A stretch of 64,000 nt of DNA from Phallusia mammillata (lineage: Eukaryota), in NCBI GenBank assembly GCA_965637545.1, contig OZ281500.1:23746001-23810000 (forward strand), written 5' to 3'. A program made the position numbers and the translations under genes. The stretch's first letter is position 1. Every line of letters starts with the position of its first letter. Under the pieces are notes generated by a model. It had not been told where the DNA came from, did no database searches, and saw nothing but the letters and a program-made list of their open reading frames with translations. Below are positions 3,401 through 18,722 of this stretch, in pieces.

Positions 3401-4223
3401 CCTTTTTTCCCATACAAACAAGCCTAACATTTATCAGCGCTACTACGTATGTTACTAAGCAACGTGACGAAAAATCGTGAAGAGAGAAAAAAATGTGAAT
3501 CGTCGAGCAGTGTGGAAAATTTTATGTCTCGTGATTGATGGTGATATAATTATGTCGTCACTATCAGTGTATATTGTAATGTGACAAGTGCGGTACATTG
3601 CTGCTAATAATGACTGGCGAAATATTTTTTTAAGTGTCATTGTGGTGGTAAAACCAAATCGGGGGCCTTGAGTCCGATTTTGGAAAAGGTACATGGGGGA
3701 TTTATTACTGTTTCGTTTCATTTTCGGCTTAGTTTAATAAGATTATTAACTTTCAAGAAGAATTTCAAATTTTTGAACAATTCGTGGATTGAAAAAAAGT
3801 GTACTTTTGGAACCATATCGACCTCTGGTGGCTTGTTGACACCGTACTTTATTTTTTGGCGCCTTTTCCTACCGTCATAGTTGGGATGGCAATAAAACAC
3901 TTTTTACGTATCAGGCCCTCCGACAGACAGGATGGGTATTTACGATCACCGTTTATGACAATAAATAGCTGAGAATGAAAATATTTTTAAGAAACAGAAT
4001 CAGTCAATGAATGTATATTTAAATGGAATATATATATTTCGCCTAAATAGCATCTTTAGTTCCTTAATCGAACAGAATCGCGTTGAAAAAGTGTTACAAC
4101 AAAAAAAACGATAAAGGTCCTTTTTCCTTTATTAGTTACAAGTGTTGTCAAAACTGTGTTATTTTGTGAAAAAACAATTCTATTTCAATCTTGTAAACTT
4201 TTACGTTCTTTTTTACTTTCTAG

Positions 4224-6929
4224 CATTTGTAACGACAACGGTCACACCGCGGGCGACCTGGCCAGCATGCAAAACTTCATCGAATGTGCAAGAGTGTTGG
4301 AATCAGCCGTCGCTAACCTCACACCGATCCATGCAGTGAACGGATTCGCAAACGGTAAGAAGCAAGTTACATTGTAAACAAGTCTGAGTTCGTGTACATA
4401 CTTGCTAAATGTTACTAGTCCTTGAACTCATATAAAACACGCCCTAATTAATCTGAAGTTTATTTATCACAATCCAAAAACTTCCAGGTAACTCGGGCGC
4501 TCACGTTTCTAACGGCAACGGACACGGACCAATCACGAACGGCGGCAACGGTCACGTGAACGGTCATCAGCCAATGACGAACGGTTGGAGTGGTCACGTG
4601 AACGAACATCATCCAATCACAAACGGGTGTTCGATGCGAAAACGGGGATACGACGACGAAAGCATTCCCAGCCTGAAGCGAGCACGAGTTGCAGGTAGGC
4701 TCTTTTGCGCTAGCTAGCGGTTGTGATGTGATGTCTATGTTCCCAGCGCAAGTTTGAGTTGGTCTTGAAGTTAAAAACAGCGCAAAAGGTTAAGTTGTGC
4801 AGTCAAATGTTTGTGAGAAGTGCGTGAACAAATACAGTAAACCTGGGTTAGACCGGTTTTCGTTAATCCGAATCTTGGCCTAATTCAAACAAAACTCCAG
4901 GTATTTGACAATATTTTTGGTCAAAATGTGTCAGGATTAACCGGGATTTACTGTGTATAAATGTTTGGGTTGTTAAAATGCGCAAGTGTTAACTAAATGG
5001 AAAATTAAATCTGTATTAGGATTGATCTTGCGTTTGGAACATACACAGTCTTTTGTTAAGTTTCTATGTTGCATGTATTGTCCGGTCTGCATACATATTG
5101 CATGTCAGCAAGATAAAATGGCGCAATATTCGCACACGTGAAATTACACTATGGTTTTGTTTCTTTCTGTGTTTATTTGCTGTGCTTTGCATAATTTCGT
5201 ACCGTGTGTGTGCTTTTGCCGGGATTTGAACCCGCGAACCTTGCATTACCACAAACCCACACCGACATATCGCACAGCAGATGACGTCACCTTCACGATG
5301 ACGTCACTTCTCTTCCGCCCCGATCAAGCGCGTTCGCATAGTGACGTCATTAACGATTCGATGGACTGCTGTTGTCATGACGATGAGCACGTGGCAACGA
5401 CGACCTTTGCTGAAAGTCAACGCCCGCCCGCAGTTTATTCCAACGGATATTATTGACTTTCGGTTGCTATGGCGACCGTGTATGACATCATACTCACTGT
5501 GTATGACATCACAACGCCGTGCCGCGTCATCACTTTTCTATTTCTCTCTTGTGATTCCGCGTAGCGCTCTTTGCAAAGCAAAATCGGAACTCGGGTGTTT
5601 TTGTCCCCAGGGCGCCACCCAGCGACCGAAAAACACTGCGATGACGTCGATATGACGTCACAAAATGACCTTGAGACTGGCAACGGTCACGTTTGTGCCA
5701 CGCCAGCGAACAGCCAAGAAGTGATGACGTCAGCTGAGAAATACGTCATGCAGCTTAAGGGGATGCCCCAATATGAGGATGAATTATTCTGTCCCGGCGA
5801 ATGGCCAGGCGCGTTCGATTCAAAACCTCACCAAGTCATCGGCGACTTACATTCGCATTTTGTCTGAGAACCGATTTTTGACCAAGTCCCCTTTGATCTG
5901 ATTTCATATTGGCGTTTGCAGTCATTTGTTATGCCTTGATTGTTGCTGTTTGTTTGCATTTTCGTTCTTGTGACGTCACATAGCAACCGCGCGCGCTCCC
6001 TATTATGACGTAGCTTCGTTTTCGCGCAGAACCCTTTCAGCACCTGCAGCAACCGCGTTTCCATGGCGACCAGCAGTTACACGTTGCAGTCGACCACAAC
6101 ACCGACAACTCTGCTGCTATATTCAACCTCAAGCAAAGATCAACGTCATCACACATACAAGACACTGACTGCGGTATGATGACCTCTGATTCGTCAATGG
6201 ACGATTGCGGCACGATCGACACGCCTTCTTCCCAAGTTGCCGGTGTCAGGGGCAGTTTCTACGCACAGTATCTTATCGAACGGCAGATGGAAATGTTTCA
6301 CGGCAGTTAAAGACAATTTTAACCCTTTCTTCCTTTACATCAGTCGCTGTTCTGTGTGGTTTTGCGCATTTTTAGTTTCTGTGTGCCGGAGTGATGTGTT
6401 CTTTTCTGTGATTTTTTGTTCGGTCCAGCGCAAAAGCTATGTCGAAGACTGACACCACATAGCTGTGTGTAAAACACGCAACCAGCCCCTAAACTGCGAT
6501 TTCAAGATTGTCTGTATAAGCTCGCTGCTCTTTAGCAGACACTGGACCTTACATGTACATTTGACAACCGACTTTGTCCACGCAAAGTGTCTAAACTCGC
6601 TGCTATACTTTTCACTTGCGACAGATCAGAACTGCACGACGCAAGATCATGAAATGGAAGCCGACGAAGATTGTCCAATCACACCGCCCGAAACAGTCAC
6701 GTGTTTCAATGACGTTTGCTCACCACGTGCTCCTAGCCCTGGAATGGAACTTCGATATTTGGAGGATGCGAGCAACGATGACCTCCAGGCGTGGGGTCAT
6801 CTCCATGGTTACGGCGACACCGCTGAAGCGCTGCCTGAAATTTGCGAGACTCGAAAACCGACTTTGATTGACAGAAACGAGACTTTTCAGAAGAAATTAA
6901 ACGGGATGCGCTCCAGGGGCTGGTCTTAA
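4224..6929 (+). CDS. ANKRD10: Ankyrin repeat domain-containing protein 10, 3' part (exons 4224-4354, 4488-4694, 6625-6929); upstream ankyrin exons not found in the window
   Basis: GT-AG exons join in frame. They give the last ankyrin repeat (ICNDNGHTAGDLASMQNFIECARVL), a basic motif (MRKRGYDDESIPSLKRAR) and WGHLHGYGDTAEALPEI. These match my recollection of vertebrate ANKRD10 ([60 protein letters not shown]). Confidence 0.8.
5281..5456 (+). CDS. ANKRD10: Candidate alternative terminal exon A of ANKRD10
   Basis: NAGNAG acceptor cacagcag| in phase 1, matching the donor at 4694; open to TGA (DDVTFTMTS...AVYSNGYY*). The pyrimidine tract is weak. Confidence 0.4.
5282..6070. promoter_or_regulatory. 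Cluster of CRE-like TGACGTCA palindromes and RFX X-box-like motifs
   Basis: Perfect TGACGTCA at 5282, 5299, 5342, 5653, 5725 and 5971; TGACATCA at 5483 and 5503; X-box-like GTTGCTATGGCGAC (5463-5476) and GTTTCCATGGCGAC (6057-6070). Confidence 0.45.
5611..5867 (+). CDS. ANKRD10: Candidate alternative terminal exon B of ANKRD10
   Basis: Strong acceptor tgtttttgtccccag|, phase 1; open frame GRHPATEK...GNGHV...GDLHSHFV*. Confidence 0.55.
6030..6310 (+). CDS. ANKRD10: Candidate alternative terminal exon C of ANKRD10
   Basis: Acceptor cttcgttttcgcgcag|, phase 1; open frame EPFQHLQQPRFHGD...FYAQYLIERQMEMFHGS*. The end resembles the vertebrate ANKRD10 C-terminus as I recall it (...TMHLHHGS*). Absent from the supplied ORF track. 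Confidence 0.6.
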
Positions 6930-9290
6930 GGTTGAGGTGATTTTTTGGTAATTGTTGTTCAGTTTTATTTTCATTTCACTGTTGTTGTGTTTTTTTAGTT
7001 GCAAAATACTGCCCTGTGGCAAAGTATGAAATCCGCATGTTATGTTAGTTTGAGCTGCCGAAAATTGTAAGAAGTATTTTTTTTCAATTTGGGCCAAACA
7101 TAGAGTTCTTTTGATAAATCTTGCATTAAACAGGACCTAATCGGCCAACCGAAACCTTTCTGTGTTTAAAAACAGGTAAATGGGCTAACAGCGCTGGTAT
7201 TACGTCGTGCATTACTTGTACATTTACGTAGCTACAAAGCGTGGTGTTTGTATTTGTGTTACATGCAGAACATCTACATCTGCGCGTAAAATCCAAAATC
7301 AAATTGTAAAATGCGAACTTACGATCCCTTAAGGTCGTACGGTGTTTATAGCATTAGAATGCATCGCCTTTTTTCACAGAGAAAATCGCACACGTGAAGT
7401 AATTCAATTTTTTCCTCATGGTTAAGGCTGTCTTATGTGGGGTTTTGTACACGTTTAACATTCAAATTTATCATACGTAAAGCCCGATGAGACTTAATAC
7501 AAATAGAAAATCTACCATGTGCCTGTTTGTGCGAAGGAAATATGAAAATTGTACTACACTGTTAAAAAATCTTAAACGTTAATAACTGCAACTAAATCAA
7601 ATTTAGGCCGTTTATTAAGGTCAACTTCCCATTTTATATCGTTGCTGGCTATTTCAAGTCCTGGTTTTTCTTGACTTTTGGTCGCAATGTATGCAAAAGT
7701 AACATTCGCTCAAATTTTCACTTCAAGTGCGTTCGCGCTGCTTTCGTACCAGTATCACCGTTAGGTGTCGCTAAACGCAACATTTGAACTACTAAGGGTG
7801 TTCCCCCCAAGGCCAAGTGCATTCAAAACCGTGCCGTGGTTCAAATCGGCTTTTTGCCATTTAGATTGTGCGTTGGTAAACCTAGTTCTTTGTTTTTTTC
7901 CGTCGCTACTTCGTTATTTCTTTGCACAAAAGCTTCGAGGCTGTCTGTAGGATATTCTTGCACAATCTAACCTCGCGACGTACCGCGTCATAATTCCACA
8001 ATATCACAGAGTACCCTGTAATTTCAGTGCATTAAAACACGTATTTTTGTGACGTGTACTTTTGTTCAAACTTTTCTACTTTCACCCTAATGTGTAATAT
8101 CCGATCGCTTCTAAGGTTTCGTCCCAGTGCATCAACTAAGTTAAACGAAAGACCTATTTTGCAAGCGATGTACAAACTTGTGTTTCGTGATATGTTCCAG
8201 TTTGTTTCCCCCTGTTACCGTTTTTTCGTCCACCAACAATCGCTTTTTGTTCGTCGTTGACTACCTTACAAGTTGCTGTAGCAGGCTTCAGTTACATACG
8301 CCCAGTTTTTTGAGTCCCCAACTTTCAGGCAACGCCATAACCCCAATCCGCTGTGACAACAAAACCCCGATTTAAATGAGTGTATTTTGGCATGTGAAAG
8401 TAGCCTTCTAATGCCGCTGTACATACATAAGTCCATATCATTTCCATCGTTCTTGATGCTTTTTGTTGACAGCTTTTGCTTTTCTGTAGCGTAACGGCTG
8501 TTCTTCTGTCCCATGCGGCATTCTGTTGTTGGGAGCGATTCATTTTGTTGTTCTGTTCGACTTTTTCTAGCCTGTTTTTTTACCGAAAGAATAAATTGTC
8601 AGGGAGGTTGATGCCTGCTTGTTATTTTGTCTTCAGAAAAGCGTCTTGTCATAGTTGCCATGTCAAAGTTAGAAAGATAATTAAAATGGAATGCCACTTA
8701 TTCAAATGTTAAAGGGAGTGGTTTAAAAACTGTCGCAGTAAAAACGTTTAAATTTGGTTACAGAGCTATTTGAACTATTTTATAAAGCCACAATAATCAC
8801 TAGTGACCACTAAACAAGTATTTGCAAAACTTGAGCCAAAAACTGATTTAGACTAAATATTTGGGCCACAGAATTAAAAGCCTTAAAACCATTGGTTTAA
8901 ACAAGTTTTTCAGCGAATGAAACTAAGCGAAGTAAAAATGGTGTCCAGTCCACTAGCATTTCTTTGCCCCTCTTAAGATTACAATGAAGCACAATGAGTT
9001 TTACAATAAAAGGTACTGCATAAAAATTGGGTTTTAGACAAGTTTTTGATTAACACAGAATCATTTTGTGTTGTTTTGTTTATTTCCGCATGGAACAATA
9101 TGACAAACAAACAAACAAAAGAAGCAATAATCACAGTGTCAGAAACAATGGCAGAATTTTAAAATAGGAAAAATGTGTGACAAAATCACAAACTTTCACA
9201 TCACCTACCTTACTACACATACCAGGTTCGTTCGCTCACAGCAGGTATTTGGTATATGAAAGCCTAACTGCAACTTTGAAGGGACCATCT

Positions 9291-15685: not shown

Positions 15686-17060
15686 ATACCTTGCAGCAAC
15701 CATGCTTCCTGACGGCGCAGTCGTTGGAATAGTGCTAGGTTGTGTTTTTGTCACTAACGCAATTTCAGTTGCTGTGACGTGGTTCCTGGCGAAACGTCAC
15801 TACCTGAAAAAGCAGACGCCAACCGAGGAACGGGTCTACGACCTGCCACCTGATTCAGTTTATCCACTACAACAAGCCCAAACGACAACCGCTACAAATG
15901 ACCATCCCCGCATGTTGCCAATAGCAACGGGTCCGAGGTCACCTGCGTCCAATGGTCGTCCGTCACCAGGACACGACGAATCGCGCGGTTTTCAGAATCA
16001 CATGTTCTATGACGACACAACAAACACCCCTCAACCCAAAAAGCGTACCACGTCACAAAGCAATGACGTCAGCATCAGACCTGTGGTCACACAAGGCAAC
16101 TCGATTACGTCACCATCTCCAAGCATTGTCGCTACCAGCAAGGTTAATATGTTGTATTTTTTTCTGAGTCTCATTTGATACATTTTTCTTCTTTGCTTGT
16201 CCAGCAAAGTAATATCATTCTTGTAAGGTATGTTACATGATTTGTATGTGCGAAAATATGTTCTTTTGAAACTGGTTTGGCTGTCGCATTTACAATTTGG
16301 TTTTGTCTGAAGAATAGTGCACCATTTGGTTTATGGGGAAAAATCAGAACAATTTATCCTTGTTCTTATTAGATTCAGTCTAAATAAGTAAGCTGCAGAC
16401 AGTGCACACAGTTTTAACCAGTGCTGTCTGATCTGTACAGCTATAGTGACAAGACAGTAGTATAGGCAGGCTACGGTCCTCTGTTTGGAATAATGACTTA
16501 AAGTCATGTAGCCATATCAAGTGGTATTTAATAAGCAGTACCAAAATTGTATTCACTAAAATTTTGGAAACTCTCATGAACCGCTCAAGCTTCTGACTTG
16601 TGGTTAAAACGGCATTAGTTTGCAAAAAAGTTTGTTTCATCTTTGTTTTGCATTTCTACAGATCAATCTTGCTCCCGTGCAAAAACCTCCAAGGAAATGG
16701 TCTCGTTCGGTGGAAGATTTGACACAACAGGGTAAAGACGTTGAAGGGGAAGACCATTACATCACTTACCAGACAGAGGACAGACACCGGGAGCGTGCGA
16801 TGTCCTTGGGACAGGACTTGGAGAGACAACATATGCAGACTGTGTCACAAGCTATAAAAGAGAGATCGAGGCCGCCTGTGGAAGCTATAAGCGACAGTGA
16901 CAGTGATTACGAACACTTGGTGGACGAACACCCAAAAATAGAGATTAAGGAAGATGTGATGCCACATAATCATGGATCTCCTCAAACTGGGAGTTATGTA
17001 GCGGCTCAAAAACCACAAATTCTTCCGAAACCTAAAAGGATGCAGGAAAACAGAATATGA
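15686..17060 (+). CDS. Orphan single-pass transmembrane protein with a tyrosine/proline-rich cytoplasmic tail (exons 15686-16142, 16662-17060)
   Basis: Hydrophobic AVVGIVLGCVFVTNAISVAVTWFLA followed by KRH. AAG|gttaat joins tacag|ATC in phase 0. The tail carries VYDLP, VYPL, HYITY, DYEHL and PKPK motifs. No family recognised. Confidence 0.6.
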
Positions 17061-17170
17061 GGCCTCTTGCACTTGCAAATGTAAATGATTTTGCAAACCA
17101 AGCTGTTACGTTTTACTGTTCGGTTTTTGCAACGTAAAGGTTATGAGTTAAAAGTCGGGTTAGTCTTAAG

Positions 17171-17371
17171 CGGTGGTTCTTAATCCCCTGGGATAGTTAG
17201 CCCCAAAGACGTTTAAAAATGACGAAGTTTTACATATTTTTGTGGGGTACTTAATTGGTACTGAAATTATCATTTTTTTACATTTCATGACGTCATACTC
17301 ATGTGATGTCAAACTTGTGGGATTTTTTATCTATTTGCATATTTTGTAATTGTTAAGGTTGAAAACCACTA
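17171..17371. mobile_element. hAT-type MITE
   Basis: CGGTGGTTCTTAATC...GGTTGAAAACCACTA; TSD GTCTTAAG/GTCTAAAG. Confidence 0.6.
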
Positions 17372-18722
17372 GTCTAAAGTTTTTTTAGCTGATATTTACT
17401 ATGCAAACCAGTTTACAGCATAACAAGTTTCCACTTAAAAGAGTCGGTGCTATAGGCAAAGACTAACGCTTGTAGTTTCGGCCCATCCCATATTACACAC
17501 TTTTGACTTTGTGTTGAATTATTACTTGACATGCGACAAATGTATTCAATAGTTTTGTGGTTAAAAATCCCACTGGAAACTTATAATGATAAGCCCTTTT
17601 CGTCACAATTCGGGGGAAACAAGCCGGAAATGTTGGCTTTTGGATTTGCATTTACTTGATGTGACTTGAAAACCATGTCTCGGTTCAATTATTGTAAAAG
17701 CCTTGCTCAAGGAGTCATGGGGGGTATTTGCCGCTCGGTTCCGCTGTTTGGCTCGCGTACAGCGAGCGACACGGAATTTTTCGTTCCGCGTGACTTTTCA
17801 TCATCATGTGACGCCTGACGTCAGAGTAGGTGTTTTTTGGGGTGCTATATTTGATGTTCAAGTCCCAAAGAAAATCTTAACAGGTTTTTCGTCACCTTGT
17901 TGTGCTTTGTACCTTTGACAGCTTCGTGTCGCAGAATAATAAGATTTAACGGTAACTGGTATCTTTAGGGAAATTTTGCAATACGTTGCTGTTTTGTATG
18001 CACTTATTCTGTTACTATATTTGTTATTTTGCTCACAATGTTCCAATGTTGACCAATTCCAGGTATTTTTCGTTATATTACTTCAATTATAGAGCAACAA
18101 AAGCCATATAATTTCATGTGTGCTATTTTAACAGTTATTTCTTTTCCATAATTTCATGTGTGCTATTTTAAGTTATTTTTTTTTCTATACCTACGTCTTC
18201 CAAGTTTAAGAAATATGCATTTTTCACGTTTTGTGAATTGGTTTACTAACTTTGACTTCAAATAAACGCTTGAAACCTGCTACATGATATATATTTTGGC
18301 AAAATACAAAAACTGCAAGAAAACAAAGCAAACACGCATTGAAGAACGCTTCACAGAACAAATAGGTTTGTTGTGCATCAACAACAATGGTGGCATTCGG
18401 TTTTATCTGTGACGTCACATAGGGTATTGAATTGTATTGTGCATTTTGATTGTATTCGCTTGTTGTCAACTGTTCTAGTTTTTGCAACTGCACTTGGTCT
18501 TCAAAAATAAAAGAAAAACACCGCATGTGAACAATTGAAAAAGAGCGAAATGGATGAAGTGAGAAATTGGAATGCTTGAAATCGACAGGGCTTTTAGGTA
18601 ACTCAATTTTACAGTTCATTGCACACAACAGATAGAATTACCGGAGAGGTACTGAAGCGTGAAATCACATGATCCCAGTTTAATTTCTACACCACTTAAC
18701 GCTTAAGCCAGTCCAGCAAAAC

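What the first reader, a model, noticed from the sequence alone, without database searches (positions are those of the whole stretch)
4694..6929. ANKRD10 carries an array of four phase-matched alternative last exons (a possible C-terminal tail switch)
Seen: after the exon ending ...KRARVA G| (phase 1), four successive AG acceptors (5281, 5611, 6030, 6625) are all phase 1. Each opens a frame of roughly 58-101 codons that ends in its own stop (...SNGYY*, ...HSHFV*, ...EMFHGS*, ...RSRGWS*). The exons are GC-richer than the surrounding intron. Recalled knowledge: vertebrate ANKRD10 has [11 protein letters not shown] and a terminal HGS* in one tail. Here these two hallmarks sit in different exons (D and C), so at least two exons look functional. 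Inference: one ankyrin scaffold gets mutually exclusive C-termini through 3' splice-site or polyadenylation choice. The different ends could act as distinct binding motifs or C-degrons (exon D ends in an RxxG-like motif). I know of no description of such an array.
Basis: partly seen in the sequence, partly recalled or inferred. Interest (0 to 1): 0.85.

Follow-up and report, generated by a model that had tools for sequence, protein, structure and literature searches.

The report
ANKRD10 four alternative C-terminal tails
In this sea-squirt genome, the ANKRD10 gene joins one splice donor to any of four acceptors inside a single long last exon, giving one ankyrin protein four different ends; all four ends are conserved in other ascidians and already appear as predicted isoforms in two of them.

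Summary
Spliced transcriptome contigs from four studies join donor 4694 to acceptor A at 5281 in all four runs, with a NAGNAG variant at 5278. They join it to C at 6030 in three runs and to D at 6625 in one run. No run shows a junction to B at 5611.

Comparison supports all four tails. In Clavelina lepadiformis the tails lie in the same order A-B-C-D after the same donor, and each is an annotated isoform. Ciona intestinalis has annotated A and D isoforms. Five unnamed ascidian genomic loci keep the A, C and D end motifs, and the closest one also keeps B.

The proposed mechanism needs correcting. These are not separate last exons with their own poly(A) sites. They are nested alternative 3' splice sites in one terminal exon. 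Contigs run unbroken to about 8610, and the only AATAAA is at 8590.

D carries the vertebrate-like GDTAE core. The link between C and the vertebrate HGS end is only suggestive. The RxxG C-degron idea fails.

This is a real, conserved example of a known mechanism. Interest is moderate.

The parts
4224..4354 (+). ANKRD10 exon 4, the last ankyrin repeat and the start of the linker. Exons 1-3 lie upstream of the window: G000:C7:23738001-23746000 = L003, at 5717-5926, 6896-7048 and 7540-7631.
   Evidence: Junction 4354->4488 seen in all 4 runs. The loose end before 4224 maps to L003. tblastn to relatives, E 1e-6 to 3e-12.
4488..4694 (+). Exon 5, the shared last common exon. It encodes an N/G/H-rich linker and RKRGYDDESIPSLKRARVA, which looks like a bipartite nuclear localisation signal (inference). 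It ends in phase 1, with the donor GT at 4695-4696.
   Evidence: RKR...DESIP..KR is invariant among 9 D-type orthologues.
5278..5456 (+). Tail A. The acceptor places the exon start at 5281, with a NAGNAG alternative at 5278. It encodes 58 codons ending ...PPAVYSNGYY*, stop at 5454-5456.
   Evidence: Junction 4694->5281 in 4 of 4 runs and 4694->5278 in X1. The [FY][ST]NGYY* end is present in all 5 relatives' loci. It matches the ends of Ciona intestinalis isoform X4 and Clavelina P0023.
5611..5867 (+). Tail B. It encodes 85 codons with the core TSAEKYVMQLKGMPQYEDELF and ends ...HSHFV*. It has the best polypyrimidine tract of the four acceptors (13 of 18 pyrimidines). No junction was seen in the 4 runs.
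   Evidence: 51% identity over 55 aa to L006, E 4e-12. 37% over 86 aa to Clavelina isoform P0024, E 7e-11, aligned to the very end.
6030..6310 (+). Tail C. It encodes 93 codons ending ...GSFYAQYLIERQMEMFHGS*. The Clavelina counterpart of this end is predicted to form a C-terminal helix.
   Evidence: Junction 4694->6030 in X1, X5 and X17. The end motif, with a stop directly after HGx, is present in all 5 relatives, each with an upstream phase-1 acceptor. Clavelina isoform P0022 matches. Helix 306-320 of P0022, pLDDT 53-65.
6625..6929 (+). Tail D. It encodes 101 codons with RAPSPGM...LQAWGHLHGYGDTAE...RSRGWS*. This is the tail of the database Phallusia mammillata ANKRD10.
   Evidence: Junction 4694->6625 in X1 only. 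98% identity to P0017. 12 hits in 1.84 billion representative proteins, of which the 11 retrieved end in or near ...GWx. The GDTAE core aligns to vertebrate ANKRD10.
6930..8611 (+). Shared 3' UTR and common transcript end. AATAAA lies at 8590-8595. For A-form and C-form mRNAs the UTR begins earlier, at 5457 and 6311.
   Evidence: Contigs run unbroken over 5277-6055, 6026-6651 and 6622-8587/8604/8611. One X9 contig joins exon 4, exon 5 and 5277-7422. Poly(A) signal scan.

Best explanation
This is the 3' end of the ANKRD10 orthologue of Phallusia mammillata or a very close relative. A single donor at the end of exon 5 (4694, phase 1) is spliced to one of four alternative 3' splice sites at 5281 (or 5278), 5611, 6030 and 6625. 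All four lie nested inside one composite terminal exon about 3.3 kb long that ends at a single poly(A) site near 8610.

Each acceptor opens its own short reading frame with its own stop. The constant part is the four ankyrin repeats, a disordered linker and an NLS-like RKR...KRAR motif. To this is attached one of four unrelated, mostly disordered tails, each ending in a different conserved short motif: A ...YSNGYY*, B ...SAEKYV..L.G.PQYEDE...H[YF]x*, C ...FY.QYL.ERQM.M.HGx*, and D RAPSPGM...GYGDTAE...RGWx*.

Sequence downstream of the chosen stop, including the later tails, is carried as 3' UTR. Every stop lies in the last exon, so none should trigger junction-dependent nonsense-mediated decay.

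Shown: junctions to A, C and D; the continuity of the exon; conservation of all four tails and of their order across ascidians. Inferred: that the tails are alternative partner-binding or free-C-terminus motifs; that acceptor choice is regulated; and that B is used in tissues or stages not sampled here.
For: - RNA: GT..AG junctions 4694->5281 (4 of 4 runs), ->5278 (X1), ->6030 (3 runs) and ->6625 (X1). No other junctions occur in 4100-8900 apart from the exon 4-5 join. In X1 the junction depths (22.3+16.4, 31.8, 27.9) sum to 98, against an exon 5 depth of 104.
- Single 3' end: AATAAA occurs only at 8590, and contigs end at 8587-8611.
- Gene identity: 98% to Phallusia mammillata ANKRD10 over the tail, and Ank Pfam hits on exons 1 and 2.
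- Conservation: Clavelina lepadiformis encodes A, B, C and D as four contiguous blocks in the same order after KRPRVA|G. Each is an annotated isoform. Ciona intestinalis X4 is A type and X2 is D type. Five unnamed ascidian loci keep the A, C and D ends in the order A<C<D, and L006 also keeps B.
- Frame-specific control. The region is single copy in the genome, and the tails are not paralogous to each other.
- Structure: the ankyrin domain has pLDDT above 90 and the tails are disordered, with a C-terminal helix in the C-type protein.
Against: - No junction to B appears in any of the four runs, so B is supported only by conservation.
- The RNA evidence comes from Logan contigs, not raw reads. 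Rare isoforms are dropped, depths are unitig means, and strand and true 3' ends are not shown. Internal non-canonical poly(A) use cannot be excluded (ATTAAA at 6896, 7125 and 8031).
- The runs are labelled RNA only by guess, although their GT..AG junctions show they contain spliced RNA.
- D, the database isoform, was seen in only one study.
- No protein-level evidence exists for any tail.
- The few polymorphisms in C and D are mostly non-synonymous, which gives no population-level support for constraint.
Confidence: 0.85

Rival explanations
1. True alternative last exons, the reader's model: each tail is a separate terminal exon with its own cleavage and polyadenylation site, so tail choice is made jointly by splicing and poly(A) site competition.
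For: Clavelina has an AATAAA about 90 nt after its A stop. Contigs cannot show RNA ends. ATTAAA variants lie at 6896 and 7125.
Against: No AATAAA or ATTAAA lies between the A, B or C stops and the next acceptor. The 5277-6055 unitig has a mean depth (61 in X1) at or above the A-junction depth (39). One X9 contig links exons 4 and 5 to 5277-7422. All runs end near 8600.
Confidence: 0.08
2. Only tail D is functional. The A and C junctions are splicing noise at cryptic acceptors, tolerated because they escape nonsense-mediated decay.
For: D is the only Phallusia isoform in the protein databases. It has the strongest cross-phylum similarity.
Against: A is the most widely seen junction (4 of 4 runs), and D was seen in one run only. 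The A and C end motifs, with stops directly after them, are conserved in six other ascidian loci whose flanking non-coding DNA does not align. Clavelina and Ciona have annotated A, B and C isoforms.
Confidence: 0.04
3. Tail B is a relic in this species. It is conserved in sequence but no longer, or only negligibly, spliced, so the working array has three tails.
For: No junction to 5611 in four runs from four studies. No B-type frame was detected in four of the five unnamed relatives.
Against: The 85-codon frame is intact and has the best acceptor context of the four. The core is 51% identical to L006 and matches a Clavelina annotated isoform to its last residues. No polymorphism was seen in 5281-5867 in X17, against about 1 per 125 nt elsewhere. 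Contigs drop rare variants, and the sampled tissues are unknown.
Confidence: 0.3
4. A, B, C and D are consecutive constitutive exons, and their apparent stops lie in introns just past real donors.
For: A GT at 6306 after C would keep phase 1 into D.
Against: No junction starts inside 5281-6929 in any run. The residue before the C stop varies (S, F, V, L) with no conserved GT. Relatives' annotated isoforms end at these stops.
Confidence: 0.01

Closest known systems
Predicted ANKRD10 isoforms of other ascidians: Clavelina lepadiformis (P0018, P0022, P0023, P0024) and Ciona intestinalis X2 and X4 (P0019, P0021)
   Same: Same gene and same branch point after KR.RVA. Same four tail types with the same end motifs. 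In Clavelina the genomic order A-B-C-D is the same, within about 1.9 kb.
   Different: Those are automated gene models in sequence databases. I found no paper describing them. For Phallusia only the D isoform was found in the databases. The tail interiors are highly diverged, at 34-48% identity.
Alternative 3' splice sites in a composite terminal exon, including NAGNAG tandem acceptors
   Same: One donor, several acceptors, shared downstream sequence and a shared poly(A) site. The 5278/5281 pair is a textbook CAGCAG tandem acceptor.
   Different: The acceptors are 330-1340 nt apart and each opens a separate conserved coding unit with its own stop. Four conserved outcomes is unusually many.
Alternative last exons with coupled alternative polyadenylation
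   Same: The outcome is mutually exclusive C-termini on a constant N-terminal scaffold.
   Different: The tails have no separate poly(A) signals or ends. Upstream tails' mRNAs carry the later tails as UTR.
Human ANKRD10-1 (long) and ANKRD10-2 (short) splice variants (PMC11882939)
   Same: The same gene family has C-terminally different isoforms. The paper reports that only the short form binds MYC and co-activates it, so tail choice can change partners.
   Different: I did not compare the human sequences. Other vertebrate homologues combine the GDTAE core and the ...LYHGS* end in one tail and have a different short tail ending ...MQTPCRCTNSYAYL*, which shows no profile similarity to tail B.

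Membership tests
ANKRD10 orthologue | N-terminal block of ankyrin repeats | tested here: met
   Pfam Ank/Ank_2 hits on exons 1 and 2. AF2 model of P0017 residues 13-186 has pLDDT above 90 and is helical-repeat.
ANKRD10 orthologue | Best named relatives are ANKRD10, and the linker motif RKR..DESIP..KR is shared | tested here: met
   Named ANKRD10 hits run from tunicates to mammals. 98% identity to Phallusia mammillata ANKRD10 over the tail. The motif is invariant in alignment A3.
ANKRD10 orthologue | C-terminal G[YF]GDTAE core | tested here: met
   Tail D carries GYGDTAE. It aligns to the vertebrate HGFGDTAE at E 1e-5 to 1e-7 in the local database.
Alternative 3' splice sites within one terminal exon | One donor joined to two or more acceptors | tested here: met
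   4694 joins 5281, 5278, 6030 and 6625 with GT..AG.
Alternative 3' splice sites within one terminal exon | All forms share downstream sequence and one 3' end | tested here: met
   Overlapping contigs run unbroken from 5277 to 8587-8611. AATAAA occurs only at 8590. Contigs cannot exclude minor internal ends.
Alternative last exons with own poly(A) sites | Each terminal exon has its own cleavage and polyadenylation site | tested here: not met
   No poly(A) signal lies after the A, B or C stops, and transcripts read through.
Gly-end C-degron (RxxG*) | Glycine is the C-terminal residue, with Arg at -3 or -4 (from established knowledge of these degrons, not tested experimentally) | tested here: not met
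   D ends R-S-R-G-W-S*. The conserved pattern is GWx*, with Gly at -3.
NAGNAG tandem acceptor | Two AGs 3 nt apart, both used, differing by one codon | tested here: met
   CAGCAG at 5275-5280. Junctions to 5278 and 5281 both appear in X1.

The most novel reading that the evidence does not exclude
The four-tail array is an ancient, regulated C-terminal motif switch. Each conserved end (NGYY*, H[YF]x*, HGx*, GWx*) recruits a different partner or reader of the free C-terminus to the same nuclear ankyrin scaffold. Vertebrate ANKRD10 derives from fusion of the D core (GDTAE) with the C end (HGS*) into one tail. On this reading, ascidians expose the separate modules and offer a simple system, with one donor and four acceptors, for dissecting ANKRD10 function and distal 3' splice-site choice.
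Probability: 0.25. Interest if true: 0.6.

Novelty: new member of a known kind. Interest (0 to 1): 0.42.

Why it matters
ANKRD10 is poorly understood. One paper reports that human splice variants with different C-termini differ in MYC binding (PMC11882939). An ascidian gene that offers four conserved, mutually exclusive tails from a single donor gives a compact natural experiment on what the tails do. It is also a clean model for how the spliceosome chooses among acceptors spread over 1.3 kb in a terminal exon.

There is also a practical annotation point. The only Phallusia isoform found in the protein databases (D) was the rarest junction in the sampled transcriptomes, and A was the commonest.

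Tried and rejected
- The search for homologous proteins with tail C alone gave nothing, and with the B region of P0024 gave only P0024 itself. These blanks are uninformative because of the tool's length window.
- The protein-atlas search and Pfam on the tails returned nothing usable.
- The idea that tail B is homologous to the short alternative tails of teleosts and snakes (...CRCTNSYAYL*) or of Lingula, Owenia and Amphiura (...C...[FY].I*) was rejected. hhalign gave probability 0.1%.
- The idea that the four tails arose by internal duplication was rejected. Pairwise scores are at or below shuffled means.
- An HMM of seven tunicate C ends against non-tunicate ANKRD10 scored at most 6.2 bits, not above the decoys. 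Homology of the C end to the vertebrate ...LYHGS* end is therefore only suggestive, although the top real hits all align to the very C-terminus.
- The TGACGTCA cluster as a conserved regulatory element was rejected, because it is not conserved as a cluster in relatives.
- The A/B/D shared frame as a relic of one long ancestral exon (only 9 stops in 549 codons) is not supported. The frames differ in L006.

Full report
**What is in the sequence.** Window 4224-4354 and 4488-4694 are the last two common coding exons of an ANKRD10 gene. Exons 1-3 lie just upstream of the window (L003). Exon 5 ends ...RKRGYDDESIPSLKRARVA plus one G in phase 1, followed by GTAGGC. Downstream, AG acceptors place exon starts at 5281, 5611, 6030 and 6625.

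On sequence alone this is not beyond chance. The 5100-6900 stretch is GC-rich and poor in stop codons in most frames, and 20 of 96 AGs open 50 or more codons in phase 1.

**RNA evidence.** Logan contigs from four transcriptome-like runs of four studies were laid on 4100-8900. All four show the exon 4-5 junction, so they contain spliced RNA.
- Donor 4694 joins 5281 in all four runs.
- It joins 5278 in X1; this is the CAGCAG tandem acceptor.
- It joins 6030 in X1, X5 and X17.
- It joins 6625 in X1 only.
- No junction reaches 5611, and none starts inside 5281-8600.

Contigs are continuous over 5277-6055, 6026-6651 and 6622-8587/8604/8611. One X9 contig carries exon 4, exon 5 and 5277-7422. In X1 the junction depths (38.7 for A, 31.8 for C, 27.9 for D) add up to the exon 5 depth (104). 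The only AATAAA between 5281 and 8800 is at 8590, and no ATTAAA follows the A, B or C stops before the next acceptor.

The architecture is therefore nested alternative 3' splice sites in one terminal exon of about 3.3 kb with one 3' end. It is not four exons each with its own poly(A) site. Contigs cannot show minor internal ends or rare junctions.

**Identity of the gene and organism.** Tail D was searched against 1.84 billion representative proteins and found 12 relatives. The 11 retrieved end in or near ...GWx. One is a Ciona savignyi protein in which KRARTA runs straight into a D-like tail. A full-length relative (P0009) then retrieved named ANKRD10 proteins from tunicates to mammals. Phallusia mammillata ANKRD10 (P0017) is 98% identical to the exon 5 to D product. 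The 240-Mb genome is therefore Phallusia mammillata or a very near relative.

**Conservation of all four tails.**
- Clavelina lepadiformis has four annotated isoforms that diverge right after KRPRVA and end ...VVYSNGYY* (A)...SAEKYVRDLQGVPQYEDE...CHYS* (B)...SFYSQYLLERQIQMYHGL* (C) and ...GYGDTAE...MGWQ* (D).
- In the Clavelina genome the four tails are four contiguous blocks in the order A, B, C, D within 1.9 kb.
- Ciona intestinalis isoform X4 is A type, 85% identical over the last 13 residues. Isoform X2 is D type.
- Five unnamed ascidian-like genomic loci, found through their D-like ORFs, each carry [FY][ST]NGYY*, then ...ER[QE]M.M.HGx*, then GDTAE...GWx*, in that order. Plausible phase-1 acceptors lie at the heads of the C frames.
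- The closest of the five (L006) also has B, at 51% identity over 55 residues.
- As a control, all 87 stop-free segments of 4695-8600 in six frames were searched against these loci. Hits came only at the B, C and D cores, plus off-frame or antisense shadows of those cores and one weak 24-residue hit just downstream of D. Tail A did not pass this control and rests on its end motif and the annotated A isoforms.
- The region is single copy in the genome, and the tails are not similar to each other.

**Relation to vertebrates.** In vertebrate ANKRD10 one tail holds both H[YF]HGFGDTAE and the ...LYHGS* end. Tail D aligns to the GDTAE core with modest significance in the small local database, but no vertebrate protein passed E 0.001 in the 1.84-billion-protein search. 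The C end shares only the Y...HGx* outline with vertebrates and amphioxus.

Vertebrates and several invertebrates have yet other short alternative tails, which are unrelated to B. Alternative C-termini therefore seem to be a general habit of this gene. A paper on human ANKRD10 reports that the long and short variants differ in MYC binding.

**How it probably works.** The ankyrin block folds confidently, and everything after residue 186 or so is predicted to be disordered. The exceptions are short helices, notably the conserved C-type end in the Clavelina isoform. Each tail is conserved right up to its stop codon.

I infer that the tails are alternative short linear motifs, possibly read at the free C-terminus, attached to a constant and probably nuclear scaffold. 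Acceptor choice sets the ratio of tails. The ratio differs among studies: D appears only in one, and A is dominant elsewhere. That hints at regulation, but the sample identities are coded. Acceptor B has the best consensus context yet is unused in these samples, which fits either repression or tissue specificity. The RxxG degron idea fails, because the glycine is at position -3.

**Verdict.** The mechanism is corrected to nested 3' splice sites with a shared 3' end. Novelty is limited. The kind of mechanism is known, and the isoforms are already predicted in Clavelina and Ciona. However, I found no paper on them, and for Phallusia only the D isoform was found in the databases.

Noticed in passing
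window 5282-5978 (also 16064-18410): Six perfect TGACGTCA (CRE-like) palindromes lie within 700 nt spanning tails A and B and the C acceptor region. The whole window has 13, against 0.66 expected. The 5000-5999 bin holds 14 TGACGT/ACGTCA matches (a perfect palindrome counts twice). The cluster is not conserved in relatives, except the copy inside the B core. Function unknown.
   Followed up: partly
window 5275-5281: CAGCAG tandem (NAGNAG) acceptor at tail A. Both 5278 and 5281 are used in run X1, adding or omitting one Ala codon.
   Followed up: yes
window 4695-5280: The intron before tail A is retained at low depth in X1 (12.7 against 104 for exon 5) and partly in X17 and X5.
   Followed up: no
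window 6308-6310, 6640, 6906: Run X17 differs from the reference at the C stop codon (TAA to TAG, still a stop). It also carries T>M and M>V changes in tail D that match the database protein P0017. No differences were seen in 5281-5867, although the rate elsewhere is about 1 per 125 nt.
   Followed up: partly
window 5281-6929: Tails A, B and D share one reading frame that has only 9 stops in 549 codons, against 17-33 in the other five frames. The frames are not shared in relative L006, so this is probably coincidence or a composition effect.
   Followed up: partly
L013:10988 (Clavelina lepadiformis): An AATAAA lies about 90 nt after the Clavelina A-tail stop. Poly(A) choice may contribute there, even though it does not appear to in this window.
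   Followed up: no
L010:15725-18550: A 941-residue ORF with reverse transcriptase, RNase H and integrase domains (an LTR retrotransposon) lies downstream of the ANKRD10 locus of one unnamed relative.
   Followed up: no
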